From Paragordius varius (Eukaryota > Animalia > Nematomorpha), in contig OZ176058.1 of assembly GCA_964247055.1 (NCBI GenBank), positions 496,001 to 560,000 of the forward strand: a stretch of DNA of 64,000 nucleotides, given 5' to 3'. Position 1 is the first letter of the stretch. Every line of letters begins with the position of its first letter. The position numbers and the translations under genes are program-made. This document shows positions 20,247 through 49,254 of the stretch, in pieces. The notes beneath the pieces were generated by a model, which was given only the letters and a program-made list of their open reading frames with translations, was not told the origin of the DNA and made no database searches.

Positions 20247-20739
20247 CCATTTACAATGGATTCTCACCCTTCAACAATTCATATTTACCCTTAAACAATT
20301 CGAATTCACCTTTGAGCAATTCAAATTCACCCTTGAACAACAATTCAAATTCACCCTTTCAAATTCACCCTTAAACAATTCAAATTCCGCCTTGAGCAAT
20401 TCAAATTCACCCTTAAATAATTTAAATTCACAATCAACCAATTCAAATTCACCCTTGAACAATTCAAATTCACCCTTAAACAATTCAATTCGAAGCCCTA
20501 AAAATAAAATTGTCTTTTCGAGCAGCTATAACTCATAATATAATTTATAAGAAATATTTTACCACATATTTTAAATTTTTTTAACAATATATTGATTTTA
20601 AACAGAATTTCATATTTAAAAATATTATATAATAAAGGAATTTTTTTTATTTTAAAAAACACATATTTTATTTTAAGGTGAATTGAATTGTTCAAGGGTA
20701 AATTTGAGTTTGAAATGTTCAAGTGCATTTCCTAAATGG
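20247..20739. mobile_element. Foldback MITE family B copy (about 11 left-arm 21-mers)
   Basis: tata|CCATTTAC...AAATGG|tata; source of the spurious NSNSPLN ORFs. Confidence 0.8.
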
Positions 20740-25071: not shown

Positions 25072-26491
25072 CTTGTTATATTCAAAAAAATATAAATAAA
25101 AAATATAAAAACTAAAAAAAAATAAATAAAAATAATAATAATTTTAAAAAAATGCATGTTTTGCAAAAAATGGTAATAAAAGAATTTTTTTAATAATATT
25201 TATAGCAATGAAATCAACTTTTGTCTTTTATAATATAATTCCTTAAAAAAATAAAATTTTATTTTCATATATATTTTTAATAACATTATTTATTTTTTAG
25301 ATTAAAAACTTTTACAAATTCAATCTTTTTAATGGAAAAAAAAATATTTCAAAATGTAATTTTTTAATATCATAAATTTAAAAATATAATTTTTTACAAA
25401 TTTTATTATAAAATCCAAAATATAATTATATAAACTTTGATATTTTTCGTAGATGTATCTACATTAAGTAAAAAACTCTCAGATGATCGCTGAGCACGTG
25501 ACCAGGATTGGACGAATGGGGAGGCGTTCACGTGAGTCAGCTGAGCTAACGTGACACGTTTAGCACGTGCTTTGGGGTCTTCGTAATAATCTAAATATCT
25601 AAAAAAATTTAATTAAAAATAAAATTATTTTTTATTTTATTTAAAAAAAAAATAAAATTATTTTATTTTATTTACAAAATAATTTATTTTTTTAATAGAA
25701 ATAATTTTATTTTATATAAAAAATTTGATTATATTTTTTATTATTTAAAAAATAAAATTATTATTTAAAATTAAAAAAATTTTAATTTTTTTAAAAAAAT
25801 TGAATATATCGTTTATTAATAAATTATTTTTAAATAAAAATTTCTTTTGTTATTTTAAATAAATCATAAATCATTTCAAAATTTTATATTATTATTTTTT
25901 AATAAATAAACAATAAGAAAAAATATTTTCATCAAATATAAAAAATTTTAAATAAAAGAAAATTTAATAATAAACGCGTTTTTAACAATTTTTAATTCGA
26001 TAAATATTGAAAGATTGTATTTTCATCAAAAATTATAAAATTTTCAATACATTTTCCAAACTAAATAATATTGTTAATATTAATAAAATCTCTAAATTAT
26101 ATAAAAAAAAATTAAATTATTAAAAAAAAATAATTAAAAATAGATAAAAATGAATAATATTATATTTAATTTTTTTTGATAAAAATTAAAAATATAAAAC
26201 TTTAAAAAATATTTTTTTAAATAAAATATTTTTTATATAAAAATTTAAAATATACTTAAATTTTAAAATATTTTTTTAATTATATATTTTATTTTTATAA
26301 TAATTTTAAATTATTTTATAAAAAATAATTTTAAAACAAAAAAAATTTTATTAAAAATAATATAATTTTACGTATTAAATTTTTGTTTAGCTGGAAATGA
26401 CATTTGATCCGATCTGAACGGGTCCAGCTGTTGATATTCTACGGAGGGGGCGGGTATTTCTAAAATTAATAAAAATATATTTTTTACAAAT

Positions 26492-26537
<46 letters not shown>

Positions 26538-29500
26538 TAATTTTATATACAAAAATATATATTAAAAAACCAAATTTTAAATAATATTTTTATATTTAAT
26601 TATTTTTTAATAAAATAAATTATTTTACTTTATGAAAAATAATTTATTTTTATTAAAAAAACCAAATTATAAATAATAAATTTTTATTATAAATTTAATT
26701 TTTTAATATAAATAAATTATTTTACTATATAAAAAATAAATTTACTTTTAAACTTCGTGTTTTATAATCGAATAAATGTAAGCTCTTTCTATATTTAACA
26801 TTTTTTTAAAAAAATAAAAATAATAAATTTATCTCTAAATAATAAAAAACTAAAAAATTTTAATTAAAAATATTTATTTTATGTAATAATTTAAATCTAA
26901 TTTAAAAATTCTAAATCTTATTTTTTATAAAAATAAATTATTAATTTAATTTATTTTTTAATAAAAATTTAATTTTAAAATTTTTTAACTCAGTTCCTTC
27001 TGATAGAATGAATGTAAGATATCATGCCACGTGGCTTGAAACCAAGAAATTTCAACAGCTGTTAATTCACTCTGGAAGGTTCGGTAAAAATGACGGGAAC
27101 TGAAAACACGTGACGAGATCAGCTGATTATTTAATAGAGTATAAGCTGATTTTTGGGAAGCATTTTCTTTGCTTAGACCCATTCTAATATATTATATATA
27201 TATATATATATATTATTAAAACATTTTAAAATTAAATAAAAATTAAAATAAAATAATTTGTATTTGTAAATTAATTTTTAAAAACTTTTGCAAAAATTGA
27301 TTCCTTAAATAAAGACGTATAATCTTATAAACCATTTACAATTCAAATTCACCACCCTAAAATAAATTATGTCTTTTGGGGCAGCTAAAACTCATCATAT
27401 TAATATGAAATATAGCTTTATGGCGCGCATAATTTATTATTTTTTCAGTATTATTTTGGAATTTTAAACGAAATTTCCTTTTTTAAAAATATTTAAAAAT
27501 ATATGTATTTTTTAATCTCAAAAAAAATATAATTTATTTTAGGGTGAATTGGAATTGTTTAAGTGTAAATTTAAATATAGTATATCAATATTTAATAAAC
27601 TATGTTATTAAAAGGACTAATTAAATAATTTGTATCCGAAAAAAATTTATTTAATAATAAAACGTGTAATATGGAGAATGAGCTGTTTTAGGATATAAAA
27701 GAATAGTTTTAATATATTTTATAAATTACTAAAATTTTAAAATAAGATATATTTCTTTATTTAAAATAAATTATGTGCAATATGTATCCTATTTTCTGTA
27801 TTTTACTATATATAATAATTAAAATAAGGATTAGTTTTATAATTTAAATTTAACTCATCCATTTATAAATTTTAGTCAATAAAAATTAAATTAGAATAAA
27901 TATTCTAAAATTAGATCAATTTACATAAATAAATTTTACTCCCAAATTTAATTCTTACAAATAAGACGTGTAATCTGGGGTGGGAACAGCTGTTTTTTGG
28001 TGAAACAATAAAAAACCCATACAATAATAAGCTTTTTTAACGAAAAAACTTAACAAAGTATATCGCAATTTTAATTTTATTAAAATTTAAACGTACAAAC
28101 GCTTAATTTTCGCGATAACAGCTGTATATTCAAAAACTATTTTATAATTCTTACTTATTCTAGAAATAATTTAAATTTTAATATTCTCAATTTTACATTT
28201 TTCAAATTTAATTCTTACAAATAAGACGCGTAATCTGAGGTGGGAACAGCTGTTTTGTGGTGAAACAACAGGAAAACCATTCTATGATACCCAAGTCCAC
28301 GGGGGAAAAATGGTCTAATGTAAGGTAACAGCTGTTGGCCCTCGCCATCACCTGTTTTGCATTCATTCATAAACTCATATGGGTGATTAAGATCAGCTGA
28401 TTTTTGTGGAAAAAATTTAACCCGTGAAGGTTTATCTGCGTGAGCTGGGATATTTGCACTTGAAAATTATATATAAAAAAATAAGTTTTATAAAACTTAA
28501 AAATATTTATTTAAATAGATTTTAAATAATTTTTGAATAATACGAAAAATTTCAATATTTTAAAATTAGCAAAATTTATTTAGAGTTAGAATTAAAAATT
28601 GATATTATTACATAAATACAATTAAATATATAGAAATTGATTAAAAATAATTTTGAAAAAGGCAAAACATCTAAAAAATTAAAAACCGTAACCTATTTCG
28701 AAGGGTTTTTATGAAACATGAAAAATTGATTAAATATTATATTCAAGAAAGAAATTTATAAAATATTATATAAGATAAAAATAATCTCTCATTTTTTATA
28801 TAAAAGTTTCCAAATTTTGGATAAAAATGAAATTTTTAAAAAATTACCATAGAAAATGCAATTTTTTTTATAAAATTAAATTTATACAAAAAAATCATTA
28901 TTTTTATTAAATATATATAAAAAATTATTCAATTTTTTTACAAAAATAGAAATATTAATTTTATTATTTTAAAAAAAATTTAAAAAACTAAATTCAATTT
29001 ATTTTATAATTCTCAAAAATAAAGACTTACACAAACCAATGTAACACTTCATTTCTGGGGTCATCAATAATACCCTGATCTGTTAAATCAAATTTATTCA
29101 TATCTGCTTGATATAATTTTTCTAATTGATCAGCTGATTTTCGAACAGCTGTTTTTCCAGTTTCCGCCATATGATTTTGTGTTTTGCCGTTAATAACAGC
29201 TGATAAGTTTGAAATATCAGCTGTGTTTCCAGTTTCAGCCATATGATTTTGTGTTTTTATGCCGTTAAAATCAGCTGGTAAGTTTAAATCACAAGCTGTG
29301 TTTTTGGTTGCTGTCATATGATTTTGTGCATTTCTGCTGTTAAAATCACCTGATTGACGATCAGCTGAGTTTAGCGTTTTTATAATATTAATTTTATTAT
29401 CGTTGTTTAAAAAGCGTGGTGGAACATTTAATTGTAGTTGTATGGAGGTGTTTGGGTTATCTAAACTATCTGTATATCTGAAAAAAAATTAAAAAATTAT

Positions 29501-32500
29501 TATAATAATTTTTTTTAATATTATTTAAAAAAATTATTTTAATTTTTTTTAAAAAATATATAATATTTTTTTAAAAAAATTTTATAATAATTTTTGAGAT
29601 TCATATTAAACCTTTGGAAAAATATTATAAATAATCAAATATCCACATTTTTTATATAAATATATAAAAATTAATATTATCAAAAATAATAATAAAAAAT
29701 CATTTTTTTAACAAAAAATCACCGAATTTAAAATTCAATTAATACAAATATATAAAAACAAATTATTAAAATCATATTTTTTAATATATTAATATTAAAT
29801 TAATTAATCTGTTATAAAATTAAAAAATTTAAAATATATTTGTAATTTTAAAAAAATATAAAATAAAATAAATCAAAAGACCTATAAAATATATTTAAAA
29901 TTAATTAAAAAAATTCTTTATTTTTATATTTGAAAAATTTAAAATTAAAAAATGAATTTCTTGATTAAAAAAATATTTTTTAATAAAAACTAAAAAAATT
30001 AAAACTTTATATAACACAAAAAAAATAATTTCTTAATAAAAATATAAATTTTTAATAAAAACTAAAAAAATTAAATTTTTTAAAAATAAAAATAAATATT
30101 TTTAATATAAATAAAATAAATTTAACAAATTAAATTTCTTGATTAAATAAAAAATTTTTAATATAAACTTAAAATATTAAATTAAATAATAAAAAAATAA
30201 ATTTTTAATAAAAACTTAAAAAATATAATTTTTCAAAAAAAACTAAAAAAATTAAAAAAATATAAACATTTAATAAAAACAAAAAAAATCATTTTTAATA
30301 AAAACTAAAAAAAAACATTTTTATATCATAAATAATTTTTAAATTTTTATTAATAAAAACAAAAAAAAACATTTTTTTAATAAAAACAAAAATAATCATT
30401 TTTTTTATATTTTAAATAATTTTTTTAAAATTTCAAAAAAATAATTAATAAAATAAATTTTTATTAAAAATATTTAAAATATATTATATAAAATCTATTT
30501 TTGTTGCAAAAAAAATTATAAAAAAAATAATTTTTTTCAAATAATTTAAAAAAAAAATATTTTTTTTAAAAAAATATTATAAAAATTAAAAATACCTTTT
30601 AACTGTATCATATCGTTCAATGTGTTTAACATTGCGTCGATCTAAACTATCAAAGGCGCCCCCTTTAATCAGCTGATCTGGCGTGTGATCATAAAAAGGG
30701 GATGGTAATACACTTATATTTTCAGTTTTTCTAAAAATTTATAATCAAAAAAAATAAATTAAAATAAATAAAATTCTTTAATTTTAAAATAAAATAGAAA
30801 AATATTCAAAAAATTAAAATATATATTATTAAAAATATTAAAAAATTAATATATTTTTAGTTTTTCTAGAAATTAAAAATAAATAAAATTAAATTATTTA
30901 AAAAATCAAAAAAAATCAATAAAAAAAATATAAAAAATTATTTGAAAATAAAATATATATTCAGATAAAATTATAAATAAATACATTAAAATATATATAA
31001 ATTAATATTAAAAATTAAAATATAATTATTTTCACTATTCTAATATTTTCAGAAAAAAATAAAAAAAATTAAAAAAAATATATTAAAAATAATTAAAATA
31101 AAATAAAAAAATTTAAAAATAGTAGATAAAAAAAATTCAAAAAAAATTATTTAATTTAATAAAAATAAAATATAAATAAATTAAAAGAAATTATGTGAAA
31201 ATAAATAAATTTAAATAAAAAAATAAAAATGAAAGGAAAAAAAAATAAAAAAATTAAAATAAATTAAAAAATAAGGATAGAAAAATATGAAAATAAATAA
31301 AAAAATTCAAAAAAAATATTTATAAATTTTAAAATAATTGATTCATTTTTAGAAAAATAAAATAAATTATTAAAAATTATTTAAAAAAATAAAAGTAAAG
31401 AAAATTACAATTATTAATTTTATTAAAATAAAATTTAATAATAAATTAAATTGAATAAAACTATTCTGAAACAATTTATTACATTAAAAATATATAAAAA
31501 ATTATTTAAATATAAATAATTTTATAAAATTTATCTGAAAATAAATAAATAAAAAAAAAATTTAAATAAAATAAATAATCATTTAAATATAGAAAAAATA
31601 TTTGAAAAATTAATATATTTATTAAATTTTATAAAAATAAAATATATATATTCAGAAAAAATTAAAAAAAATTAAATGAAAATAAAAAAATTTAATAAAA
31701 ATATTTAAAAATAACTTTTAAAATAATTAATTAATATTCAGAAAAATAAAATAATAAATAATTAAAAAATATTAAAAAATTAAAAAATAAAAAATATATA
31801 TAAAAAAATTAAAAAAAAAATTTAAAAATAATTAATATCAAAAATAATTAATTTATATTCAAAAATAAAATAAATTATTAAAAAAGAAAAAAAATTATTT
31901 GAAAATTAAAATTATTTAATTTTATTAAAATAAAATAGAAAAACATTTAAAAAATTAAAAAATATTAAAATTAATAAATTTATTTAATTAATATAAAATA
32001 GAAAAAAATTAAAATAAAATAAAAAATTTTTTAAAAATAAAAATTAAAAAAAAATATATTTAAAAATAGTTAATTTCAAAAATAATTAATTTATATTCAG
32101 AAATATAAAATAAAATAAATTATTAAAAATTATTTAAAAAAATAAAAGAAAAAAAATTATTTGAAAATTAAAATTATTTAATTTTACTAAATAAAATAAA
32201 AAATTTAAAAATTAAAAAAAATAAAAATATTAAAATTCAAAAAAAATCATAAATAGTTAATTTCAAAAATAATTAATTTATATTCAGAAAAATATAAATT
32301 ATTAAAAATTATTTAAAAATATAAAAGAAAAAAAATTATTTAAAAATTAAAATTATTTAATTTTATTAAAATAAAATAGAAAAATATTTAAAAAATTAAA
32401 AAATATAAAAATATCTTAATTTTAAAATTTAAAAATTTTAATATATTTTTACTGTGACGGTTTTTCCACAGTAATAGGCAAGCCAGGATCTAACGAAGTT

Positions 32501-33374
32501 AACAACAAAGTATAATATCCTAAATCAGGTGATCTGCGAGTCTTTATGTTTTTTTCGCTATTATTAATTAGCGAACAAGTCGCATATGGTGTTAATATTG
32601 TAATTTCTGGAGACTGAGAAGTCTAAAAATATTAAATAAAAATAAAATAATATTAACTCAATTTTAGAAATATTGTAAATTTGTAAGTTTTGAAAAATTA
32701 TAAAATTAATATTAAATATACCATTGAACAAATCAAATTCACCCTCGAACAATTCGAATTCACCTTTAAATTCACCTTAATTCAAATTTACCCTTGAATA
32801 ATTTAAATTTAACATTGAACAATTCAAATTTACCCTTAAAACAATTCAAATTTACCCTTGAACAATTCATATTCACCCTTAAACAATTTAAATTTACCTT
32901 TGAATAATTTAAATTTACCATTGAACAATTAAATTTACCCTTAAACAAATTTAATTCAAACTTGAACAATTCAAATTCAAATTCACCCTTAAACAATTTA
33001 CATCCTTGAACTATTTAAATTTACCCTCGAACAATTCAAAATCACCCTTGAACAATTCAAATTTACCCTCAAACAATTCAAATTCACCCTTGATCAAATC
33101 AAATTCGCATTATAAAAAATTATGTGTTTTTTTAAATTAAAAATTACCTATAATTATTTTGATATTTTTATGAAATGAAATTTTGTTTAAAATTAATGTA
33201 ATACTTAAAAATAATAAACTATGGGCCATAAGAAATATTTCAATAATGATAGTTATATTAGCTGCCCGAAAACACATAATTTATTTTTCAAGGGTGAATT
33301 TAAATTGTTCAAGGGTAAATTTGCATTATTTTAGGGTAATTTAAATTGTTCAAGAGTGAATTTAAATTGTAAAT

Positions 33375-33415
<41 letters not shown>

Positions 33416-36400
33416 ATTTAGTTTTCTGTAATTGATTCTTAAAAAACGAAGAATTTTAATTTTGATTAAAAACATATTATAGAAATTTTTTTGGGGTTTC
33501 TCTATTTTAGATTCTATAATTGTAAATTTCTTAGGGCTTTTAAAAAAATAAATTTTTGAGAATATTTATATTATTTAAAGAACAAGTCGCATATGGTAAA
33601 TATTTAATTTCTGATGATTGGGAAGTCTAAAAAAATTTTTAATTTTAAAAAATCAATTTTAATCTCAAAAGTTTTTTAAAAATATTTTTACTTTTTTTTA
33701 TCAAATGCAATAATTTACCTACAACACTAAAATAGAATAAAAATTTTATTTTTGGTAAAAAAATTAAAAAAAAGGATGGTTTTCGATTTTTAAGAAATTT
33801 AGGTTTAAAGCACAAGTCGTATACGGTATTAAAATTGTAATTACGGGTAACTGAGAAATATATATATTCGGAGTAAGATTATAATTTAATTTAAAGTTTT
33901 TTATTTTTTCGAATAATTTTATTTGATTAAATCTATATTCTAAGAAAATAATTTTCAGGGTAAAATTTAACTTTTTTTTTACAGAAATATCTAACGTTTA
34001 TTCTTCAATTAATTATCTTTAGGTAACTCAATGTTTTGATTGAGAGATGTATATTGATAACTTTACCATTTATATATTTTATTGCACATTTTTATTACCA
34101 TTTACAGTCAAAAATCACCCTAAAAATAATTTATGTGTTTTCTCACTAATATAACTCATTATTATAAAAATTATCTTTATAGCACAGTGTATTATTTTTT
34201 CAGTATAATTTGAATTTAAATAAAATTTAATTTTTTAAAAATATAGGTAATTTTTAATCTTAAAAAACATATAATTTATTTGAGGGGGAATTTGAATTGT
34301 TTTAAAGAATAGATTTATGTATCAGGATTCTCAGAGTGCTTTTAGTTTTGAGTTTTACAAATTTAAAAAAGTTATCTAGACTTTGTGGTATTAGCTTCAT
34401 ATAGAAAATTCACAAATTTTGAGCACAATATTTTGTGTTTACAAAAAATATCTTCATGAAATAAATATATATAGATATATATATCAGGATTTTCATAATG
34501 CATTTAGTTTTGGCTTTAAATGTTTTAGGATTTTTAAAAACGACTTTTGAGGTAGAGCTTTTATATTATATATCAAAATATATGCGCATATTATGTTAAA
34601 TAAAAAGTTTTGATTTAGTTTACTGACTATGATACAAGCATGTATCAGAATTCTCAGAGTGATTTGTGTATTAGATGAATTAAGAAATTTTTTTCTGGTG
34701 ATAACTTTATTGAAAATTCACAAAATTTGAGCAAAGTTAACCAAATAAATATTTTGGTTTGATTAAATAAATATATTTTGATAGATAAATGTATCAGGAT
34801 TCTCAATGCATTTAGTTTTGGGCTTTAAGTGATTAAAAATAAAAGCACTTTTATGGTTAAGCTTTTACAAAGATCAGAAAATTTGAGCAAATTAGGTTAA
34901 ATAAGTTTTTATATATTGACTATGATAGAAGTATGTATAAAAAATTTCAGAGTGTTTGGGGTTTTAACTTTAGAGAGTGAATTAAGAAATTATGACAGTT
35001 TTGTGGCATGATATTAGCTTCAGATCGAAAAATCACAAATTTTGAGCACATTACACTCGTTTACAAAAAAAATATTTTGATTAAATAATATATTTCGATA
35101 GATAAATATATAAGGATTCTTATAATGCATTCAGTTATGAGCTTTAAGTTATTTAGGAAAGTTAAGAACACTTTTGTGGTAAAGCTTTTATAAAAAATCA
35201 GAAAATTTGAGCAAATAATGGTAAACTAATAATTCATAAGTATACAAATTCTGATAAATTATATCAGAATTCTCAGGGTGCTTTTAATTTTTGAGCTTTA
35301 CGAGTAATTTAAGAAAGTTATTGACAGTTTTGTGGCATTAGCTTCAGATCAAAAAATCGCAAAATTTGCTCAAATTATGGTAAATAATTTTTTTGTAAAA
35401 ATACTTTTAATCTAAAAAATTCCATAAAAAAATACATCACGTTTTTATAAAACTTTATTTATTTGCAAAAAAGCAAAAAGAGGCGTTTCAATGTTGAAAT
35501 CTTTATATGTTCCGTATAGTTAACCTTAAAATGGATATAATATATATAATATATAAAAGCTTTAAAAATTAAAATTTCAAATTAGGGGAAAAATGTTATA
35601 TATCCGATAAATATTTTAAAATGATAAAACATTTACTTCAAAAATACATATTTTTTTAAAAAAAATATTTCAATGTTATTTATACTTTTTTTACTCTAAA
35701 TTCTTTTAAAAAAAAATAAATTTAAAAAAGTAAAAACCTCAAACGCATCCAATATATTTCCACGATATACAGGGGAGAAAACATATTTTTCATTATTTTT
35801 AATTTTATTAGAGTTTAGGCTATCAGCTGATTTCTTATTTGACGAGTTTAGATCAGCCAAGCTTTCTATTTCATTTGTAATTTGATTTGTGTTTTCGTTA
35901 TCAACTTTTTCAGTCGCTATAAATTAAAAAAATCAAATGTTTAGGAACTCTATAATATTATTTTTAAATGAATTGTTTTAGATCTCTATAAAATTTAAAA
36001 AAACAATTGTTTTATCATAAATCGTATTTTCAACAAAAAAAATTAATAGAAGAGCTATTAAATGTTTATGATTTTATCGTAAAACATATTTTAAACCAAA
36101 AAAATTAATAAAAGAGCTAATTAAATGTTTATAATTTTATTTTAACAATCAATTGTTTTAGAACTCTATAATTAAAAAAACCAATTGTTTTATTGTAAAC
36201 ATATTTTCAACAAATAAATTAATAAAAGAGCTAATTAAATTTTTATAAAGAGTTTATTGTTTTTATCTGTAATCATTTAATTTAATCATTTTTTGGGAAT
36301 ACTATTAATTTGGTAAAATTTTTAAGAACAAATAAATAATTTAATAATTTATCCAAAAAAATTCATTATTAGTTCAATATAACCATAAAACAATTGTTTC

Positions 36401-39400
36401 CTCGGTTTTTTAATTTTAGTTTTTTTAAAAAAATATTACTTAATTTAAAATGTATTGTTTAAAACAACTATTTTTATAATTCTTTAGTCTAAAACAATCA
36501 ATATACAATCTGTTTTGGTATTTTCCAATTCAAATTATAAAAAATATGATTTCAATTAAACTAATTATTCATAATTTTTTCAACTAAATGTGATATCTCA
36601 TAAAAAGTATTATTTCAATTAAACAAAGTAGACATATTTTTTAACTTAAAATCCATTAAATATTCATATCAAAAATCCAATATTGATTTCAAAAATCTAT
36701 ATCAAAAAACCAAAAAAGTAACAATATATAAACACATTCACCTATTTCCCCCTCTTTTCCCAATTCAATTTGTTCAAGATCACCTGATTTTTCCGATTGA
36801 CTATGTGAATATAAAATTTGCATAGGTACATGCGGATGAAATATATATTGACTTGAGGGGCAATTTTCATTTAAGGAATTAGAATTAGATTTAGAATTGT
36901 TTGAAAAAGCTGGGCCAAATATATCCCTATAAAGTCCGTAATGTTCAGCCAGGGCTTGAGTTTGCCCCACTTGGTTTCTACATGCTTTGATATTAATTTC
37001 AAATGTGGTTTTATCAGTTTTAATTTCAAAATTTTGATTTGTTTCATTAATTTTATTAACAACAACTTTACGAGTGTTTTCAAAATTATTATTGGCGTTG
37101 GTTTCAGTATTAATATTCTCAATATTCTTGTTGTTAATTTGATTTTCAGCATGAATGCATCTTTCAACACTGTCCAAATTGATGAGTACTATTTAATAAA
37201 ATTGATACCATTTTTAACTTTAGTAGTAAACATTTAAAATAAAATTAGGTTTTATAATATAAAATTTCCGGAAAACGTGTTAAATTATAGGAAAATTTTT
37301 AGTTTTAACAAGATAATTATCTTTAAGTTTTAAAATTATTCTCAATATTATTGATGATTTGATTTTCAGCATGAATGCATCTTTCAACACTGTTCAAATC
37401 GATAAGCACTATTGAAAAATAAAATTTCACAAAAAAAGTTTGAAATAATATTTTACAGGTAGTGATTTAATTAAAAATTCCTAATTTTAAACAGATTTTA
37501 ATAATTATAGTTTCAGTATTTATATTCTCAATATTGTAATTTGATTTTCGGCATGAATGCATCTTTCAACATTGTCCAAATTGATAAGCACTTTTGAAAA
37601 TATAAAATTTATTTATTTTTAAATAATTTCATTTTTAACTTCAATAGTGAACATTTAAAATAAAATTAGGATTTATAATACAAAATTTCCGGAAAACGTA
37701 TAAAATTAAGAGAATTTCTAGTTTTAACAAGATTTTAATCATTATATTCTCAATATTGATGAATTGATTTTCTGTGTGAATGCATCTTTCAACACTGTCC
37801 ATATTGATAAATACTATTGAAAAAATTATATAATTTTTATTTTAATAGTGAACATTAATGATTTCACTATCTGATTAAACTCGTCTTTTACAACTCTTCA
37901 AATCATTAAATTCTTTTACAGTGATTACAAGACTGTTTCATGATTTTCGCTTATATTCTCAATATAAATTATTCACTGCAAAAACGCACTTTATAACAAT
38001 TATATCAAATTGTTTCATAAAACGTATATATCTATTCTTTGTATTATTTTCATATAATTAGGTTCAAAAGCGGTTACATAATTGATTAATTATTGGAGTG
38101 AACGTGATTTCTAAATTTGATAAGTACTATAACAGTAAAAATTGAAATTATACGGACAAAATGTAAAAATATCTAAAAAAAATTTCTAAGGACAACCATA
38201 CTTTTTTAAACCTTAATTTATGCTATGAAAACATTTAATTACAATCGTAAAATAGATTATTGATTGTGTTACCAATTTACATTCCCATATTATATACTTG
38301 TAGTTTAAAACAATGAGTTATAATTAAAACTAATCAAGATTAAAAAGGGTATGGTTGTTTTTTTGAAAAATATAACTGATTGTTTTAAATTGCAAAATAT
38401 AAGAAATGTAAATTGCACAATCAATTATGTAGTTTACGAATGTATTTAATTATCTATGGTTGTATTTTTTAAAATATATTTATCTTTTTACTCTCACGTT
38501 TTGTCCTTATTATAATTTCAATATTTACTGTAAATACTAATTATATAAAGATATTATAGATGAATGCTAAAACACTTTATAACAGTTTCACATAAAGTAT
38601 TGCATGTTAAATCATATCTTTAAAACAATTTTACGGGTATAAAAAGATTTTAGCCCCTTCCTTGTTTATTATTTTAAGCTCCAAAAGTGTTTTAAGATTT
38701 CGCTTACATTAAAAAAGGTTAACTTAAGATTTTTGCGAGTCTGTTTATAGAGACTCAAGGTATAAGTTTTGGTTTTTTGGTTAAGAGTCATTTAGAAGAT
38801 TAATCGTATGTAATATCGAATTATCGCAAAATTAGCGGACATTATGATAAATCTAATTTTTGTGGTATAAGCTAGTTCATAAAATATTATTGATACAGTA
38901 TAAAATAATAAAAAAGCAAACATGTTTATCAATATTTTCTTTTACTTTAAATCGGCATCATCAAAATTAGATAGCTTATTTTTCAAAAAAATTAAAATAT
39001 TAATAGTATTCTAGCAATATTCCTTTCAAATATTAATCTGTTAAATTCGTTTCAAATTCAATAAGCTAACTCAATGGGACTCAAACAGCGGCCCTAAAAA
39101 AGCTTTTCCCTATTTTCGACATTTTAGAAATAAAATATTTTTACTTATTTTTCAAACATGAAAAAAATTTAAACAATCAACATTATTTTATCAATAATCC
39201 TATCATTCTTTTAAAATTCAAATTCAATTAGCTAACTCAGTGGTATTTAAACCGCGGCCATACAAAAAATTACCCTATTTTATTTTTTATCAATAATATC
39301 ACAATTAAATAGTTTAAAATTCAAAAAAAATCAAAAAATTAAACAATCAACATTATTTTATTAATTTTCCTTTTAAAGATTAACTTAATTTTTAAAGAAA

Positions 39401-42357
39401 TTTATAAACTAACTTAAGGGAAAATTAAACAGCGGCCCTAAAAAAGCTTATCATGACCGTATTTCAATTTTTTTATTTTTTTATTTTAAATCAGTAATAT
39501 CACAAATAATTTAAATTTCAAAACAAAAACAAAAAAATTAAAATATTAACAGTATTTTATCAATATTCCCTTCAAAGATTAATTTGTTAAATTCGTTTCC
39601 AATTGAATACGCTAACTCAGTGGGACTCAAACCGCGGCCCCAAAAGTAATTTTTATACCCTATTTTCAACTTTTAATATCAATTTTTACTGTATTGAGAA
39701 TAACAATTAAACAGGTTAATTTTCAAAAAAATCGAAAAAAATCAAAATGTTGATAATATTTTATCAATATAATTTTATCAATATCTCGTCAAAGATTAGC
39801 TTATTATAAAGAAATTTGTTTCCAATTCAATTAGCTAACGGTTGTACTCAAATCTCGGCCCTAAAAAGCTTTTTATAAACCTATTGTCAACTTTATAATT
39901 TTTACTATAAATGAAACAATTAAATGTTAATTTGGAATAAAAAAATTATTATGTTTACTAATTATACCATAAATCTTCAATCTTATATTAAATTTTCTTT
40001 TTTTAACTATTTTCTTAAAATTTATTTTATATTAATTTTTAACGTATTTAATAATATGATATATTTTTAATTTTTTTATTATTTCAACTTTTTTTTCAAA
40101 AAAATAATATTTTACCGATTTCTTCGATTAAAAATATCCTTATATATAAAAAAATTAAATTTTTTAAATTGTCTTTTAAAAATTAATATTTTTACCAATC
40201 TAAAATTACATTTTTTATTATTACAACTTTTTTAAAAAAAACTTCAAAATTTCAAATTAAAACTTTTATATAAAAATTTTACATTCTAACTTGTAAATTA
40301 GAAATAATACAATAAATAGGTTAATTGAAAAAAACAAAAAAAATAATTCGATTTAGATATTCAAAAACCCTCCTATAATTTTTTTTAATTTTAAACTTTT
40401 GATTCACTTAAAATTTATAAAAAAATTTAACGTTTTTAATTAGTAAAAAAATTTATTATTTCAACTTTTTTTTCTAAAAAAAACAATATTATACCGATTT
40501 CTTTTATTCAAAAATATCCCTATATCGTAATTTAAAGTTTAAAAATCCCAGAATATAAAAATTATATTTTTAAATTTTAATAATTAATATTTTTACAAAT
40601 CTAAAATAATATTTTTATACATAGTATTATTCACTTAATTTAAAATCACATTTTTTATTATTTAACTTTTTTTTCAAGAAAAAATTTCAACTTTAATCTT
40701 TCAAAATTTCAACTTTAAACTTTATTAAAAAAAATTTAAAAATATAATTTTATAATTTTCTTATTTTTCAAACTTACATTTATTAGTTCTAGTTAAAAAT
40801 TTAAACTTTTTTTCTAAAAAAAATAATATTTCTAAAGATGGAAATTTTATTTTTTTTTTTATTTTGAATTAAAAATTAATATATTTACCAATCTATAATG
40901 ATATTTTTTATTATTACTCACTTTTTTTAAAAAACTTTCAAAAAATTTTTAAACTTTTATAATAAAATTTTTTGAATATAATTTTCTTTTTTCTCTCAAA
41001 CTTACATTTATTAGTTCTATTTAAAAAAATTTATTATTTCAACTTTTTTTCTAAAAAAATAATATTTCTAAAGATGAAAATTTTATTATTGTTTAAAACT
41101 TATATTTTTACCAATCTAAATTGATATTTTTTATTATTCACTTTTATAAAATTCTTTAAACTTTTTATATAAAAATTTTATAAACGAATTTAATTAGTAT
41201 ATATAAAAAAATTATTATTTTAACTTTTTTTGTAAAATAATAATATTTTACCGATTTCTTTAATTAAAAAACCCCATATAAAAAAATTTTATTTTTTAAT
41301 TGTTTTTTCAAAAATTAAAATTTTACCATTTTAAAAATTAATATATTTAACAATCTAAATTAATATTTTTAGTATTTCAACTTTTTTTAGAAAAAATTTT
41401 AAAAAAAATTAATTTAAACTTTTTTTATAAAAATTTTATAGATTTTTTTTTAACTTACATTTATTAGTTCTAGCCAGCATTTCTAACTCTGGGTTTCTTT
41501 TATTAGCACGCAAGTGAGATTTTCTACGTGCCATTTCAATTGCAAAGTCAGCTGTTGTTTTTTGGTCAATCAGCTGATTAGTTTTCGCGCTGCCATGGTA
41601 ACGGTTGCCATCGGCAACGGCAAATGGATACCCAATATTAATAACAGCTGATGTTAATTCTTGTTGGTTTCTATCCAATTCTGTATTTGCTTTAAGGTTG
41701 GAACCAATTTCTCGGCGTTTTTGAACTATTAATTAAGTAATAAAATATTTTAAAATAATAAATTAAAAATGTTATATATATATTTATAAAAAAAATTATA
41801 AATAACTAAATTATTTTAAATAAAATTTAAAATCTAAATATATATAATATATATTTTGAATATTTAATTAATTATAAAAAAATGCAAACTAATAAAATTG
41901 CGATAAAAAAATATGTATTTATCAATATTACGAAAATCCTATTTAAGGTTGAAAAAAGTTGAACAAATAATATAATATATAAAACAAAGCCTTTAATTAA
42001 TAAAAGTAATTATTAATAATAGGGAATATATAAAATGAATTTAATTTATTTAATAAATTTTTATTAATAAAATTAAAACTCAAAACTCTACAATTACTTT
42101 TAATAAACACTAAAAAATATTAATAGTTAAAATTTATTTGTTAAATAGCTATCACAAAATATATTATGGAGAAAGATTTGACACGATTTATTAGGATTTA
42201 ACAAAATATAAAGTATTAAATAAAATTAAATACTTTCGATTTTTTCTTTCAAAGTTGGAATTTCATCAGGGTGAATTTGCAATATATGTTTTGCAGGAAG
42301 TTGAGCCAAGCCCTTTATTTGCAAATTAAAGATGTGTCGAATTTGGATTTTCAACAT
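24991..42357 (-). CDS. MRPL38: 39S mitochondrial ribosomal protein L38 (mL38, PEBP fold), about 844 aa, 12 coding exons
   Basis: Minus-strand exons: 42357-42234, 41725-41459, 37188-36742, 35916-35738, 32622-32453, 30730-30596, 29477-29031, 28458-28219, 27183-26990, 26459-26372, 25598-25436, 25071-24991. All are GT-AG, phases are compatible and the total is 2535 nt. Family motifs occur in the right order: INIGYP; LAEHYGLYRDIF; FHPHVPMQILY; PVYRGN; YTLLLTSLD; EVLHWFVANIP; LPYIRPFFPRGLGYHRMVFLLF; FYRTFQSELT..SWFQATW; FNTYLDYYEDPK; KWMRDDITKQRLG. The start codon and the exon 11/12 junction are the least certain parts. Confidence 0.9.
25436..25598 (-). CDS. MRPL38: MRPL38 exon 11
   Basis: YLDYYEDPKARAKRVTLAQL; donor position uncertain (gtttat at 25435 or gtagat further upstream). 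Confidence 0.75.
26372..26459 (-). CDS. MRPL38: MRPL38 exon 10
   Basis: IPAPSVEY...FPAKQKFN; ttttag| and AC|gtaaaa ends. Confidence 0.85.
26990..27183 (-). CDS. MRPL38: MRPL38 exon 9
   Basis: ORF 26985-27182; FYRTFQSELTAVEISWFQATWHDILHSFY. Confidence 0.85.
28219..28458 (-). CDS. MRPL38: MRPL38 exon 8 (PEBP core)
   Basis: VANIP...PYIRPFFPRGLGYHRMVFLLF. Confidence 0.9.
29031..29477 (-). CDS. MRPL38: MRPL38 exon 7
   Basis: 447 nt open frame including ORF 29027-29317; ends EVLHWF|gtaagt. Confidence 0.85.
30596..30730 (-). CDS. MRPL38: MRPL38 exon 6 (lineage-specific insertion)
   Basis: 135 nt, phase 2-2, open frame, tttag| and AG|gtattt ends. Confidence 0.75.
32453..32622 (-). CDS. MRPL38: MRPL38 exon 5
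   Basis: TSQSPEI...YYTLLLTSLDPG. Confidence 0.85.
32721..33376. mobile_element. Foldback MITE family B copy (about 18 left-arm 21-mers), in MRPL38 intron 4
   Basis: tata|CCATTG...GTAAATGG|tata. Confidence 0.8.
34310..35390. repeat. Degenerate tandem repeat family D, cluster 2 (MRPL38 intron 4)
   Basis: About 7 units of ATCAG(G/A)ATTCTCA..TTTAGTTTTGAGCTTTA..AAGAAAGTTA..AAAATTTGAGCA. Confidence 0.65.
35738..35916 (-). CDS. MRPL38: MRPL38 exon 4
   Basis: Ends SPVYRGNILDAFE|gttttt. Confidence 0.85.
36742..37188 (-). CDS. MRPL38: MRPL38 exon 3
   Basis: LLINLDSVER...LAEHYGLYRDIFGPAF...HPHVPMQILY; donor G|gtgaat. Confidence 0.9.
38133..38530. mobile_element. MITE A copy (only one inside MRPL38; internally expanded)
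   Basis: CAGTAAAAATTG...ATATTTACTG|ta. Confidence 0.75.
39050..39880. repeat. Five diverged tandem copies of a GC-rich core, possibly a hAT-like terminus
   Basis: TAGCTAACTCAGTGGGACTCAAACCGCGGCCC variants at about 39065, 39230, 39425, 39610 and 39830. Confidence 0.5.
41459..41725 (-). CDS. MRPL38: MRPL38 exon 2
   Basis: taatag| acceptor, |gtaagt donor; INIGYP...RANKRNPELEMLAR. Confidence 0.85.
42234..42357 (-). CDS. MRPL38: MRPL38 exon 1 (presequence-like N-terminus MLKIQIRHIF...)
   Basis: Donor GAAA|gtattt, phase 1; lies inside ORF 42226-42411. Confidence 0.7.
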
Positions 42358-42360
42358 AAG

Positions 42361-42379
42361 CACATGTAATTTTATCGAT
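42361..42379. promoter_or_regulatory. CACATG and DRE-like TATCGAT just upstream of the MRPL38 ATG
   Basis: Motif match only; TATCGATA is the arthropod housekeeping DRE. TSS unknown. Confidence 0.2.
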
Positions 42380-42492
42380 TCAAAAATATAAACGATGAAA
42401 GGTAAAATCAAATGACTTTTTAAATAAATTTTTTAAAAATAGTATTAAAATAAATAGTATAATAAAAGAACAATATAAGCCTAGGAATAATA

Positions 42493-42496
<4 letters not shown>

Positions 42497-42566
<70 letters not shown>
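42497..42566. repeat. (TA)n microsatellite, about 35 units, 140 bp upstream of the MRPL38 ATG
   Basis: Seen directly; other (TA)n tracts at about 12795, 24105, 26487, 33377, 49208 and 50352. Confidence 0.9.
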
Positions 42567-42570
<4 letters not shown>

Positions 42571-44251
42571 AATATTTTGATAAATATAGTATACATCTAT
42601 GAATCATTTATAGACAGAGATCACTCTTGAATATCATTTCTATTTAAAGATAAATAAATTTTAAATGTACACAATTTAAAAAAAAATATCTTATTTTCTA
42701 ATTTTTGTTTATTAACTATGTTAGCCGCAGAATTTCAAATTGGTATTTCCAATAAAAATTGCGAACAATGTATTATAGATTTTTTCTAGAACAAAAATCT
42801 AATATTCAAGCTTTTATTAAAATATTTACAATTATGTTAATTTTTGACACTATCAATTAAAAATTGGTTAAGTTTAACCAGTTATCCCTTTTTTTCCTAT
42901 TTATATGCAGTCTCTTAGTTTGTCACTGTAAATAATAATATAACCTCCAAAGATTTGATTTTTGACATAATGTGTTATTGTAATTATTATTTTATTTGAT
43001 TTTATCCTTCCAAGTTTATCTAAAAACCCTACCCCTAAAGCTGTTTTCTCAATAGAAGTTTCATAACTCATTTTTTAAACTTTATAATAATAGCTAATCC
43101 ATATTATATATGAGTAATCATTATTAGAGGTAGAAATCCGGAATTGACAGTAAAAATTGAAAATATTCGGACAAAATATAAAATACAAATATTTTTTTAC
43201 AAAATCAACCATATTTTTTAAATGTTGCTTTTTTTATACAACTGGTTATTGAAGAATATAAAATAAATGTAAATTGGTAGCATAACACTGTGCAACAAAA
43301 TATGGGGTCAATTTTCTGGACTCGATTTTCTAAAAATTTTCTGATTCCTTATAGTGTTGTGATCAGATTTGCGTAAAAATTTTTTTTACTTTCCCAGCTC
43401 GTTTTCGAGATATGGGACTTTTTCCATATTTGGACATATCCAAAATTTTCTTGTTTGTAAATATTTTTCGCTATGTAAACGAATAATATGTGGCTTACAT
43501 AAGTATTTTTACAAGAAATTACCAATTTATCTTCAAACTAAAAAAAAAATTTACTTAAAATATCCAATACTTTTTGTTTTAGGGGGCAAAAACCCTCAAA
43601 AATTGGGTAACTTAACATTTTTTCACACAAATATTTTTTATCAATTTATTAAATCAAAACAAACTTTATTATATGTTCTTGGATGTTGATAATGTTTGTT
43701 TAAATATAAATATCACTTTGTAATAGCTTTGTGGACTTTTATTTTTAAAAATAAATTTAATTTTTACAGCTTTTTTGTTGCTTTTTTTATGTAAAAAATA
43801 ATTTAATTTAGTCAGCTGTAAATACTAATTTCATTTTTTCATCTGAAATTTTTAAATTTTGACCATATATGGTGGCAGATATGTTGATTCGTTTGCTTCA
43901 TTTTTAAATATTTTAAAATAATATAAAATGGACAATGATTCTTATATAAATTTGTGATTGAATTCTGAATCGGAAAAATCGTCTGCCTTTTGGATATGAG
44001 AAGAACACACCAAAACCATCAAATACATTTTATATTTATACATTAGGGTTATGGATGATTCTTTATTTGTAAAGAGTGCAATGTAAAGAGGCTTATTACC
44101 CTGATGAAGTTTTACGATACTCGGAAATGAATTCTTTTTTAAAAAAGTTTAATCACCCATAAAATTTCAGTTGTTTAGAGAACAGGTATGCCACAGAGAA
44201 ATCAAAGGAAAGCACCCTCATATACTAAATTATATTTTTAATAATTTTAAC

Positions 44252-45224
44252 CAATTATTTCTAGACGCTTCTCAGGTATATATTTTACATCTTTAGGAAA
44301 GTTTAAAGGCATTTTTATTGGACCGTGCCGGAGAGCACAGGCCAATATTAATAGCATTCAGCCGAGTATATAGGGAAACCTATGATAATTTTGAAAATAT
44401 TTTGCAACTCCTCCGATACAACTTCCATTATTGGCATGTAACAGCGGATTATAAAGTTTCTAAAATTCTAATATTTTTATAGGTCATGGGACTGCTTTAC
44501 GGAATACAGAAAGGATTTCCTAAATTCTTTTGTCCTTTGTGTGAGTGGGACTCGCGGGACACCGATAACCATTACACAAAAAAAAATTGGCCCGCCAGAA
44601 CTTATGAAGTTGGGCCCAAGAATCAGACTAATTCTCCATTAATATCAGCTAACAAATTTGTTTTGCCGCCATTGCACACACTGCTTGGATTGGCCAAAAC
44701 ATTTTTGTGCAGTCTCGATAAAAATGGCGAAGCTTGGGCCCATTACTTCAGGAAGTTCAGGATGACGCCTGCCAAAATTAACGCCGCAGTTTTGATAGGG
44801 CCGTAGGTATTATACTTTTAATTTTAGGTTACGAATCTTTTCAATGATGTTATGTTTGAATCTAAAATGCAACCCAAAGAAAAAGCGGCATGGGTTGCAT
44901 TGCGAACTTTTTCTCAAAATTTTTTGGGAAATACAAAAAATAAGAACCATCTGGAATTAGGCAATCGTTTAATAGATTCTTTAAATAGGATGGGTATGTA
45001 TGTTATAATACATTTGTTTTTTAAACATTTATATTAATTTTTATCCTATAGGATGCCGCATGAGTCTAAAGCTCCATATGGTGGATTCCCATCTACATTT
45101 TTTTCCAAAAGACTCAATTAGTGACCAAAGAGGAGAAAAGGGTCACCAGCTTTTGAAACCCTTCGAAAAAACCTATCGAAACAATATAAATTTAATTTGC
45201 GATTATATATATATGAATAAATAA
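44252..45224 (+). pseudogene. Chapaev3-type DDE transposase, catalytic/C-terminal part, intron-split, one in-frame TAG
   Basis: Exons ..44275, 44297-44455, 44483-44806, 44828-44993, 45052-45224 give QLFLDASQ-ESLKAFLL...WHVTADYK-VMGLLYGIQKGFPKFFCPLCEWDSR...LPPLHTLLG...LIGP*-VTNLF...EKAAW...NFLGN...G-CRMSLKLHMVDSHLHFFP...SDQRGEKGHQ. These match the family motifs LFIDSS/SLKAVLL/GDLKV/CFLCEWDSR/LPPLH/GPQ/MSLKIH/SDExGERFHQ as recalled. Confidence 0.8.
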
Positions 45225-45544
45225 ATTATTATTTTATTTTTTCTACACCTAATTTACTTTATTATTCTAGATTAGATTATCCGTGTCTTAAAATCTTTTG
45301 ACCAAAATATATTCTAAATATTCACTTTAATAACTGATTATAATTAGGATTTGCATATAGTTCAATATAATATGATGAAATTATTTATTAATGGTAGATT
45401 TTATTAGGCATATTCTTCAATTTTCTCTGCACAGTCATCCATATTGAAAGTAATCTATTAGCTGATGTGATATACAAATTGTTGCGATTGGGTACTTTGT
45501 CATGATAATATAACTACCTATTAATAAAATACTTTTATGTGGCA

Positions 45545-45760
45545 GACGCCAAAATCGAATTGGTAAATAATTTTAAATACTTGGGCGATGTCATACATTG
45601 TCTAGGTGTGGAATAAACAAATCAGTTAAATATAGATCCCAACAGGTTGGGGTAAAATATCATTAACTTAAATTTATGCTTAAACATATATCAGCAAAAA
45701 ACAAAGGTTGATTAGAGTTGTTGATAAGCGACAATAGTTTAAATTAAATAAAACGTTAAC
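45545..45760 (+). mobile_element. LINE reverse-transcriptase fragment inside the Chapaev element
   Basis: KIELVNNFKYLGDVI followed, after a frameshift, by RIPTGWGK; FKYLG and RI..GW are typical non-LTR RT thumb motifs. Confidence 0.4.

Positions 45761-49204: not shown

Positions 49205-49254
<50 letters not shown>

What the first reader, a model, noticed from the sequence alone, without database searches (positions are those of the whole stretch)
25436..41725. MRPL38 coding exons are saturated with an AWCAGCTGWT palindrome that is nearly absent elsewhere
Seen: CAGCTG occurs 18 times in the 2535-nt CDS, at 25538, 26425, 27056, 27120, 28247, 28329, 28394, 29131, 29146, 29197, 29218, 29272, 29362, 30670, 35824, 41549, 41571 and 41645, spread over 8 of 12 exons. 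Twelve match AWCAGCTGWT exactly, 15 of 18 have A at -2 and 15 of 18 have T at +2. The sites occur in more than one frame (cag-ctg = QL; aca/tca-gct-g = TA/SA), so one dipeptide does not explain them. They lie both in insertions and in alignable core positions (ELTAVEISW, GQQLLPY, EYQQLDP, LAQLTHV). Outside this CDS I found only 4 in ~61 kb: two in decayed copies of exon 8 and one mirrored pair in the transposon arms. The LAPTM-like and transposase CDSs have none. A rough expectation at ~33% GC is about 0.2 sites. Known: AWCAGCTGWT is the AP-4/cropped-type bHLH E-box and Ohler motif 5 of fly housekeeping promoters. Inference: in a genome with almost GC-free non-coding DNA, a DNA- or RNA-level code may have moved into the exons (exon-encoded binding arrays that mark a housekeeping gene, set a chromatin or dosage domain, or aid exon definition), possibly bending the protein sequence.
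Basis: partly seen in the sequence, partly recalled or inferred. Interest (0 to 1): 0.85.

Follow-up and report, generated by a model that had tools for sequence, protein, structure and literature searches.

The report
E-box palindromes written through mL38 exons
The coding exons of a mitochondrial ribosomal protein gene in this extremely AT-rich animal genome carry a ten-letter symmetric DNA word about 80 times more often than chance, densely enough to dictate codon and amino-acid choice, and it most likely forms an array of protein-binding sites laid over the protein code.

Summary
CAGCTG occurs 22 times in the window against about 0.9 expected. Eighteen sites lie in 8 of the 11 exons of a minus-strand mL38/MRPL38 gene, where 0.24 are expected. 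Synonymous codon shuffles give about 3 sites, at most 10. All 12 [S/P/T/A]-A-[V/A/D/E/G] tripeptides and 6 of 10 Q-L dipeptides are spelled as CAGCTG, using codons that are rare elsewhere in the gene.

New here:
- Of the 64 palindromic hexamers, only E-boxes are enriched: CAGCTG 18, CACGTG 5, and CATATG weakly.
- The flank-matched variant AWCA(GG/CC)TGWT, whose core CACCTG is AP-4's published secondary core, occurs 4 times, all in exons.
- No site lies in the promoter or the first exon.
- No site lies within 28 nt of a splice junction.

My best reading, at confidence 0.45, is an array of double-stranded-DNA sites for an AP-4/cropped-type homodimeric bHLH-LZ protein, kept by selection. What the binding would achieve is inferred. 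The rivals are an RNA-level element and a biased repair or conversion drive.

The scan has already found this word in many other genes of the same genome, so MRPL38 is one instance of a genome-wide feature. RNA evidence and related-species DNA could not be obtained.

The parts
42234..42357 (-). Exon E0, first coding exon (ATG at 42357-42355). It has no E-box site, and its one Q-L is spelled CAA-CTT.
   Evidence: ATG, GT donor, and a phase that fits E1.
41459..41725 (-). Exon E1 with three CAGCTG sites at 41549, 41571 and 41645.
   Evidence: Open frame with AG/GT borders and phase fitting both neighbours. Site frames T-A-D, Q-L and S-A-V.
36742..37188 (-). Exon E2 (447 nt). It has no CAGCTG and one flank-matched variant, ATCAGGTGAT on the sense strand, at 36779-36788.
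   Evidence: The frame contains LAEHYGLYRDIF, which matches EYYGLYRDLF of mL38 chains shown. Phases are consistent. Variant found.
35738..35916 (-). Exon E3 with one CAGCTG at 35824 (K-S-A-D), in a low-complexity stretch ahead of a PVYRGN motif.
32453..32622 (-). Exon EX (YYTLLLTSLDPG). It has no CAGCTG, one flank-matched variant (ATCACCTGAT on the sense strand) at 32524-32533, and one CATATG.
   Evidence: I found it as the exon that resolves the only phase mismatch in the model.
30596..30730 (-). Exon E4 with one CAGCTG at 30670 (D-Q-L-I).
29031..29477 (-). Exon E5 with six CAGCTG sites (29131, 29146, 29197, 29218, 29272, 29362), one ATCAGGTGAT (29345) and three CATATG. It contains a 75-nt tandem repeat of 2.8 copies at 29146-29354 and ends in the conserved LHWFV.
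   Evidence: A 148-codon open frame at 32% GC. Tandem repeat.
28219..28458 (-). Exon E6, the PEBP core, with three CAGCTG sites (28247, 28329, 28394) and one AACAGGTGAT (28347).
   Evidence: Best solved-structure hits are mL38, E 5e-5. Weak Pfam PBP match..
26990..27183 (-). Exon E7 with two CAGCTG sites (27056, 27120) and two CACGTG sites (27028, 27107).
   Evidence: Aligns to mL38 residues 293-333, collinear with E6..
26372..26459 (-). Exon E8 with one CAGCTG at 26425 (Q-Q-L-D).
25406..25598 (-). Exon E9, the last coding exon (stop at 25406-25408), with one CAGCTG at 25538 and three CACGTG sites (25495, 25529, 25564).
27935..28135 (-). Intronic 'echo' of the 3' part of exon E6, including its donor. 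It carries CAGCTG at 27987 and 28119.
   Evidence: Alignments A1 and A4.
27640..27745 (-). Older, more decayed echo of the same exon edge. The word is broken here (CAGCTC, or a 3-nt gap).
   Evidence: Alignment A1. One-mismatch list (position 27678).

Best explanation
The exons of this mL38 gene carry a dense array of E-box sites, most likely read on double-stranded DNA. The main sites are the palindrome AWCAGCTGWT. There are also a few flank-matched AWCA(GG/CC)TGWT sites and a separate group of CACGTG sites in the last exons. The likely reader is a homodimeric bHLH-leucine-zipper protein of the AP-4 type (fly cropped, nematode HLH-11). CACGTG would be read by a Myc/Max- or USF/TFE-type partner.

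Shown:
- The word is about 75-fold over-represented in the exons.
- It is imposed on codons and amino acids in two reading frames.
- The enrichment is specific to E-box palindromes.
- The sites are absent from the first exon, the promoter, the transposon coding sequence and the satellites.
- The sites sit in exon interiors.

Inferred:
- A protein binds the sites, and selection rather than a mutational drive keeps them.
- The array acts from inside the transcribed gene, for example to keep a broadly expressed growth or housekeeping gene active or marked. A possible reason for the location is that the surrounding non-coding DNA is 3-8% GC and turns over by duplication, so exons are the only stable G+C-bearing DNA.
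For: - Enrichment: 18 sites against 0.24 expected in exons, 22 against 0.86 in the window, and 13 full 10-mers against 0.09.
- Nucleotide-level constraint: synonymous shuffles give about 3 and never 18. 12 of 12 and 6 of 10 possible peptide contexts are realised. CAG is 4 of 33 Gln codons and CTG 3 of 49 Leu codons outside sites.
- Amino-acid-level excess: 10 Q-L against 3.5 expected, and 12 tripeptides against 3.2.
- E-box specificity: among 64 palindromic hexamers only CAGCTG (18), CACGTG (5 against 0.21; shuffles give 0.7, 0 of 3000 reach 5) and CATATG (5 against 2.6 in shuffles) stand out. GAGCTC, CTGCAG and GACGTC are all 0.
- Secondary motif: all four exonic CACCTG/CAGGTG carry the AWCA..TGWT flanks, while the four outside exons do not. 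AP-4 binds CAGCTG as an obligate homodimer and binds CACCTG less often, and 52% of its ChIP sites are intragenic (PMC3698521, PMC7914591).
- Fly precedent: CAGCTG (E-box1) and CACGTG (E-box2, Myc-Max, downstream of the start site) are the two E-boxes of fly housekeeping and growth promoters (PMC8842121, PMC3375229).
- Symmetry: 11 of the 13 full 10-mers are perfect palindromes.
Against: - No binding data exist, and I could not check whether the genome encodes an AP-4 ortholog.
- A classical transcription-factor array would be expected in the promoter or in unconstrained intron DNA. Here it lies almost only in coding sequence, with none at the promoter or first exon.
- A density of 7 sites per kb of exon is far above ordinary binding-site clusters.
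- The preference for perfectly symmetric 10-mers over mixed half-sites (Fisher P about 0.02-0.03, weaker if only the inner flank is scored) is not predicted by independent half-site reading. It fits self-complementarity equally well.
- The AW/WT flank preference of AP-4 rests on my recollection of published matrices, not on a paper read here.
- In the older intronic echo the word has decayed, so it is not protected everywhere.
Confidence: 0.45

Rival explanations
1. The word is an RNA-level element. It is transcribed in every case here and is self-complementary. Copies in the pre-mRNA or mRNA could pair with each other, or the word could be bound by an RNA-binding protein. Either could help processing, export or stability of transcripts whose introns are almost pure A/U.
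For: - All 20 gene-linked sites lie inside the transcription unit, and none lies upstream of the start codon exon.
- Perfect palindromes are preferred over mixed half-sites, 11 to 2.
- In a minimum-energy fold of the E5-E7 pre-mRNA, neighbouring copies pair with each other: 29218/29197, 29146/29131, 28329/28247 and 28119/27987.
Against: - That pairing follows trivially from the sequences being the same palindrome.
- Pairing needs no particular word, yet the word, its flanks and its secondary variant match a known DNA-binding specificity, and a second E-box (CACGTG) is co-enriched.
- The sites avoid the 28 nt next to junctions, where splicing enhancers usually concentrate: 0 observed against 3.8 expected within 25 nt, P about 0.01.
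- No RNA data could be obtained.
Confidence: 0.2
2. A neutral or selfish sequence-specific process makes and keeps the word. Examples are mismatch repair or gene conversion biased towards CAGCTG, possibly coupled to germline transcription. Such a mechanism was once proposed for iterated palindromes in bacteria.
For: - Hyper-abundant palindromes written through coding sequence in several frames are known from cyanobacteria (HIP1, 15-300-fold; PMC5861425, PMC4390886).
- Near-saturation of every permissive peptide context (12 of 12) is what a strong drive would give.
- The A/T-ward one-step derivatives CAGTTG/CAACTG and TAGCTG/CAGCTA are absent from the exons, 0 against about 1.6 expected.
Against: - The distribution is selective. 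A 447-nt exon of the same gene, the first exon, about 1 kb of transposase coding sequence (up to 44% GC) and roughly 100 other islands of 25-33% GC in the window have none.
- The older echo lost the word.
- For HIP1 itself, conservation argued for selection rather than biased repair (PMC5861425).
- The near-cognate counts are too small to carry weight.
Confidence: 0.15
3. The excess is a by-product of protein sequence, codon-pair bias or local duplication. Under this reading there is no DNA- or RNA-level meaning.
For: - A 75-nt tandem repeat in exon E5 multiplied two sites into about five.
- With A/T-rich codon use, S/T-A-D/V tripeptides tend to be spelled WCA-GCT-GWT.
Against: - Shuffles that keep the protein and the gene's own codon pool give about 3 sites, not 18.
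- The Q-L frame uses two codons that are otherwise rare.
- The same 10-mer flanks hold in both frames.
- The permissive peptides themselves are 3-4 times over-represented.
- After removing repeat copies, about 15 independent sites remain.
Confidence: 0.03
4. The exon model is wrong for the site-rich parts. Under this reading exon E4 and most of exon E5, with 7 sites, are intronic regulatory islands rather than coding sequence.
For: - No RNA evidence exists.
- E4 plus most of E5 form an insertion of about 170 residues inside the PEBP fold, with no relatives in protein or structure searches.
- An AG just upstream of the conserved end of E5 could serve as an alternative acceptor.
Against: - E5 is a 148-codon open frame at 32% GC. 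By my own estimate of about 8% stop codons per random codon at this composition, the chance of such a frame is below 1e-4.
- E5 runs without a break into the conserved LHWFV.
- All ten junctions are AG/GT and phase-compatible only with E4 and the full E5 included.
- Even without these exons, 11 sites remain in well-supported exons.
Confidence: 0.07

Closest known systems
AP-4 (TFAP4) / Drosophila cropped E-box sites, including fly core-promoter 'E-box1' (Ohler motif 5)
   Same: Same core CAGCTG, the same two-fold symmetry expected of an obligate homodimer, and the same secondary core CACCTG. It is associated with broadly expressed growth and housekeeping genes and co-occurs with the Myc-type CACGTG box (PMC3698521, PMC7914591, PMC3375229, PMC8842121).
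   Different: Known sites are single or few and lie near transcription starts or in non-coding intragenic DNA. Here there are about 7 per kb of coding exon and none at the promoter, and they override codon and amino-acid choice.
Exonic transcription-factor sites ('duons')
   Same: Protein-coding sequence that also carries a DNA-binding code and shows codon bias attributable to it (plant and human examples: PMC6790085, 10.1101/085795, 10.1101/2021.09.06.459186).
   Different: Duons are scattered sites for many factors with subtle codon effects. Here one word saturates every permissive position of a gene and visibly changes the protein.
HIP1 (GCGATCGC), the highly iterated palindrome of cyanobacteria
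   Same: A short G+C-bearing palindrome, 15-300-fold over-represented, written through open reading frames in several frames, apparently kept by selection, with function still debated (PMC5861425, PMC4390886).
   Different: HIP1 is bacterial, spread over the whole chromosome and tied to orphan methyltransferases. The worm word is selective for genes and exons, and it matches a eukaryotic transcription-factor site.
Inverted repeats embedded in hairworm mitochondrial coding genes
   Same: Palindromic sequence tolerated inside coding sequence. If the earlier notes are right about the organism, it is the same phylum (PMC10380579).
   Different: Those are long (10 to over 100 bp), individually different hairpins in mitochondrial DNA. 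This is one fixed 10-bp word in nuclear genes.

Membership tests
AP-4/cropped-type E-box site | Palindromic core CAGCTG | tested here: met
   22 in the window and 18 in exons.
AP-4/cropped-type E-box site | Extended symmetric flanks A-W ... W-T | tested here: met
   12 of 18 exonic sites match exactly. A at -2 and T at +2 in 15 of 18 each. That this is AP-4's flank preference rests on my memory of published matrices, not on a source read here.
AP-4/cropped-type E-box site | Less frequent secondary core CACCTG | tested here: met
   Four in exons, all with the same flanks. Synonymous shuffles give 0.74, and 14 of 3000 reach 4. Specificity as published in PMC3698521.
AP-4/cropped-type E-box site | Occupied by an AP-4 ortholog encoded in the same genome | not testable with these tools
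   Only this window is readable. Earlier notes mention other bHLH genes but no AP-4.
Fly core-promoter E-box1 (Ohler motif 5) | Positioned at or just upstream of the transcription start | tested here: not met
   No CAGCTG or CACGTG between 41651 and 43812, which covers the first coding exon and its upstream DNA.
Duon (exonic transcription-factor site) | Lies in coding sequence and biases codon choice | tested here: met
   Codon shuffles and use of rare codons.
Duon (exonic transcription-factor site) | Factor occupancy in vivo | not testable with these tools
   No chromatin data.
HIP1-like iterated palindrome | Hyper-abundant palindrome in several reading frames | tested here: met
   About 75-fold in exons, in two frames.
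HIP1-like iterated palindrome | Spread along the whole chromosome irrespective of gene | tested here: not met
   Confined to one gene in 64 kb. Absent from a 447-nt exon, the transposase and about 100 islands of similar G+C.
HIP1-like iterated palindrome | Cognate DNA methyltransferase | not testable with these tools
   No methylation data and no genome-wide gene search.
Exonic splicing enhancer | Concentrated near splice junctions | tested here: not met
   The minimum distance to a junction is 28 nt. 0 sites lie within 25 nt against 3.8 expected, P about 0.01.
Exonic splicing enhancer | Effect on splicing of the host exon | not testable with these tools

The most novel reading that the evidence does not exclude
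AWCAGCTGWT is a genome-wide, gene-selective mark of gene bodies in this animal. A dedicated AP-4-like dimer would read it for a purpose other than ordinary promoter control. One possibility is licensing or protecting resident genes in an almost G+C-free, fast-turning-over genome and distinguishing them from transposons, which lack the word. The mark would be strong enough to have rewritten codons, amino acids and even whole insertions in hundreds of proteins.
Probability: 0.3. Interest if true: 0.9.

Novelty: new variant of a known kind. Interest (0 to 1): 0.8.

Why it matters
If a DNA-binding (or RNA) code can saturate coding exons to the point of fixing rare codons, changing conserved-region residues and riding in on 100-residue insertions, then protein evolution in this lineage is partly driven by a non-protein signal. 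That would be an extreme and easily measured case of overlapping codes in an animal.

It also offers a way to study how regulation is organised when non-coding DNA has been driven to 3-8% G+C. The word is short, symmetric and matches a known factor family, so the central question of who reads it can be tested directly by DAP-seq, CUT&Tag and comparative genomics across the four published horsehair-worm genomes.

Tried and rejected
- **RNA evidence.** The run search found only four DNA-like holders from one study and no RNA holder. The later ORF-scan scripts and the fold script read the window file unmasked, but no interval they analysed or printed covered those places except, a whole-window ORF scan whose printed output left out 25300-42500.
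- **Orthologs.** An HMMER search of the PEBP-core exon against 1.8 billion representatives gave one weak hit. Its contig is a 36% GC unrelated organism with no enrichment. Word-indexed searches with two large exons gave nothing. No cross-species conservation test was therefore possible.
- **Solved-structure searches.** Exons E1, E2, E5 and E9 gave nothing usable.
- **Helical phasing of site spacing.** Not significant, P about 0.2-0.3.
- **A 'one site per exon' rule.** The spread of 22 primary plus secondary sites over exons is what random placement by length gives, P 0.1-0.6.
- **Protection of the word in decaying non-coding copies.** The young echo keeps it, the older echo has lost it, and the homology of the 28119 site is ambiguous. 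This window gives no support for that claim.
- **Echo homology ending at the palindrome.** This is possible for the 28119 site but not demonstrable, and the exon E2 echoes have no E-box at their ends.
- **Literature.** No paper in the library combines CAGCTG with Nematomorpha, contains the 10-mer, or reports CAGCTG over-representation in coding exons of an animal.
- **Rfam and tRNA scans** beside the gene found nothing. Pfam found nothing for the transposon reading frames.

Full report
**Setting**

The window is about 20% G+C. Between 25.4 and 42.4 kb, short islands of 30-42% G+C sit in DNA that falls to 3-8% G+C. The islands are exons of a gene on the minus strand.

The exon at 28219-28458 has mitoribosomal protein mL38 chains as its best solved-structure matches (E 5e-5). 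The next exon aligns collinearly to mL38 residues 293-333. A third exon contains LAEHYGLYRDIF, which matches the EYYGLYRDLF stretch of the same chains printed.

From open frames, AG/GT borders and codon phase I built an 11-exon model without ever joining the pieces. It comprises E0 42234-42357, E1, E2, E3, EX 32453-32622, and E4 to E9, 2,481 nt plus the stop codon. All ten junctions are phase-compatible and no exon has an internal stop. Exon EX was found because it was needed to repair the only phase mismatch, and it carries the conserved YTLLLTSLD strand.

The protein is about twice the usual mL38 length, because of low-complexity insertions. No RNA evidence could be obtained. I worked beside those places from then on.

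- CAGCTG occurs 22 times in the window, against 0.86 in dinucleotide-preserving shuffles. The full AWCAGCTGWT occurs 13 times against 0.09.
- Eighteen sites lie in 8 of the 11 exons, where composition predicts 0.24.
- Two more lie in an intronic copy of an exon edge, and two form a mirrored pair inside the 660-nt arms of a transposon with non-consensus flanks.
- About 100 other islands of 25-33% G+C in the window have none. These include about 1 kb of transposase reading frames (up to 44% G+C) and a dispersed 21-nt satellite.

**It is a nucleotide-level signal**

- Six sites read CAG-CTG (Q-L) and twelve read xCA-GCT-Gxx.
- Shuffling synonymous codons within the gene gives about 3 sites, at most 10, and none of 3000 shuffles reaches 18. 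Resampling from the codon usage of non-site positions gives 1.75, and shuffling codon order gives 0.88.
- Outside the sites, CAG is 4 of 33 glutamine codons and CTG 3 of 49 leucine codons. Even so, 6 of 10 Q-L dipeptides are spelled CAG-CTG.
- All 12 [S/P/T/A]-A-[V/A/D/E/G] tripeptides are spelled so as to make the word.
- The permissive peptides are themselves 3-4 times more frequent than amino-acid composition predicts.
- Sites fall at alignable core positions, such as GQQLLPY against mammalian GQETCPY, as well as in insertions.
- A 75-nt tandem repeat in E5 accounts for about three of the 18 sites.

**What this analysis adds**

- **Specificity to E-boxes.** Of the 64 palindromic hexamers, only CAGCTG (18), CACGTG (5 against 0.21; shuffles give 0.7, never 5) and, weakly, CATATG are enriched in the exons. 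Palindromes of the same composition, such as GAGCTC, CTGCAG or GACGTC, are absent. The five CACGTG sites lie in the last exons, E7 and E9, and four have a T just 5' of the core.
- **A flank-matched variant.** The most frequent near-relative of the word is AWCA(GG/CC)TGWT. All four CACCTG/CAGGTG in exons carry these flanks, and the four elsewhere do not. Two of the four sit in exons that have no CAGCTG. Published ChIP-seq shows that AP-4, an obligate homodimer, binds CAGCTG and less often CACCTG, and does so mostly inside genes.
- **Fly precedent.** In flies, CAGCTG and CACGTG are the two E-boxes of housekeeping and growth promoters.
- **Not a promoter element here.** No site lies in the first coding exon or upstream of it.
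- **Exon interiors.** No site lies within 28 nt of a splice junction, whereas 3.8 would be expected within 25 nt (P about 0.01).
- **Symmetry.** Eleven of the 13 full 10-mers are perfect palindromes rather than mixed half-sites (P about 0.02-0.03). This is a lead only, because it weakens when only the inner flank is scored.

**Interpretation**

The motif spectrum points to a DNA-binding bHLH-LZ homodimer of the AP-4 type. The spectrum consists of the core, the flanks, the secondary core and the companion CACGTG. I commit to that as the most likely reader, at confidence 0.45. I take the array to be kept by selection inside the transcribed gene. One possible reason for the location is that exons are the only stable G+C-bearing DNA in a genome whose introns are nearly pure A/T and grow by local duplication.

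Binding, selection and the effect of binding are all inferred. The exonic location, the extreme density and the taste for perfect symmetry are not what an ordinary binding-site cluster predicts. These features keep two rivals alive:
- an RNA-level element, since copies do pair in a predicted fold, though trivially so;
- a sequence-specific repair or conversion drive of the kind once proposed for cyanobacterial HIP1.

A pure protein, codon or duplication artefact is excluded by the controls.

**Relation to earlier work of this scan**

Earlier notes report the same 10-mer in many other genes of this genome, including AFF, PKN, CBP, ERp44, Aha1, PAN3, rabenosyn and a collagen. They report its absence from transposons and some neighbouring genes, and they take the organism for a horsehair worm. 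I did not test the taxon.

My window agrees with those notes on enrichment and selectivity. It does not support the claim that the word outlives decay in non-coding copies, because the older echo has lost it. No paper in the library describes the phenomenon.

All searches were exon by exon and by reference.

Noticed in passing
window 25495-25569 and 27028-27112: Five CACGTG E-boxes lie in the last exons of the gene (three in E9, two in E7), against 0.21 expected. Four have T just 5' of the core (TCACGTG). They use CGT arginine codons, which are as common in this gene as AGA (12 against 13). The only other CACGTG in the window is at 12091.
   Followed up: partly
window 37102-37824; 27640-28135; 40144-41404: Exon-intron junctions are tandemly 'echoed' into the adjoining intron. 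The 5' edge of exon E2 with its acceptor has three further copies about 200 bp apart (70-81% identity). The 3' edge of E6 with its donor has two further copies. A 47-90-nt intron unit just downstream of the E1 donor recurs five times. The introns seem to grow by duplicating junction-proximal DNA.
   Followed up: partly
window 29146-29354: A 75-nt (25-codon) tandem repeat of 2.8 copies lies inside coding exon E5. Each unit carries CATATG plus two CAGCTG positions, and the flanks differ between units.
   Followed up: yes
window 29031-29477, 30596-30730, 32453-32622: mL38 here is about 827 residues, twice the usual size. Exon E4 and most of E5 insert about 170 residues between the YTLLLTSLDPG strand (exon EX) and the DDPRNEVLHWFV segment. 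The end of E5 (FDLTDQG) resembles the EX strand, which suggests an internal duplication.
   Followed up: no
window 43600-46471: A transposon has 660-nt inverted arms that are 98% complementary (43600-44259 and 45812-46471; the arms may extend beyond the stretch scanned). Between the arms lie reading frames of up to 44% G+C that match no Pfam family. It contains no consensus-flanked CAGCTG.
   Followed up: partly
window 29500-32300 and 39900-41400: The introns fall to 3-8% G+C and are strongly T-rich on the sense strand (AT skew up to +0.49 on the plus strand).
   Followed up: no
window 32717-33164 (also near 20150-20730 and 49120-49420): A 21-nt satellite (units like TTCAAATTTACCCTTGAACAA) sits in the intron between exons E3 and EX. 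Reading frames with the same repetitive peptide pattern recur elsewhere in the window. It carries no CAGCTG.
   Followed up: no
window 26480-26540, 27190-27215, 42500-42600: (TA)n microsatellites lie directly upstream of the acceptors of exons E8 and E7, and directly upstream of the first coding exon.
   Followed up: no
L001:2733-2996: The only database relative of the PEBP-core exon (P0001, 43% identity) lies on a 36% G+C contig from an environmental assembly. That exon has no CAGCTG, and the 5.4-kb contig has one.
   Followed up: yes
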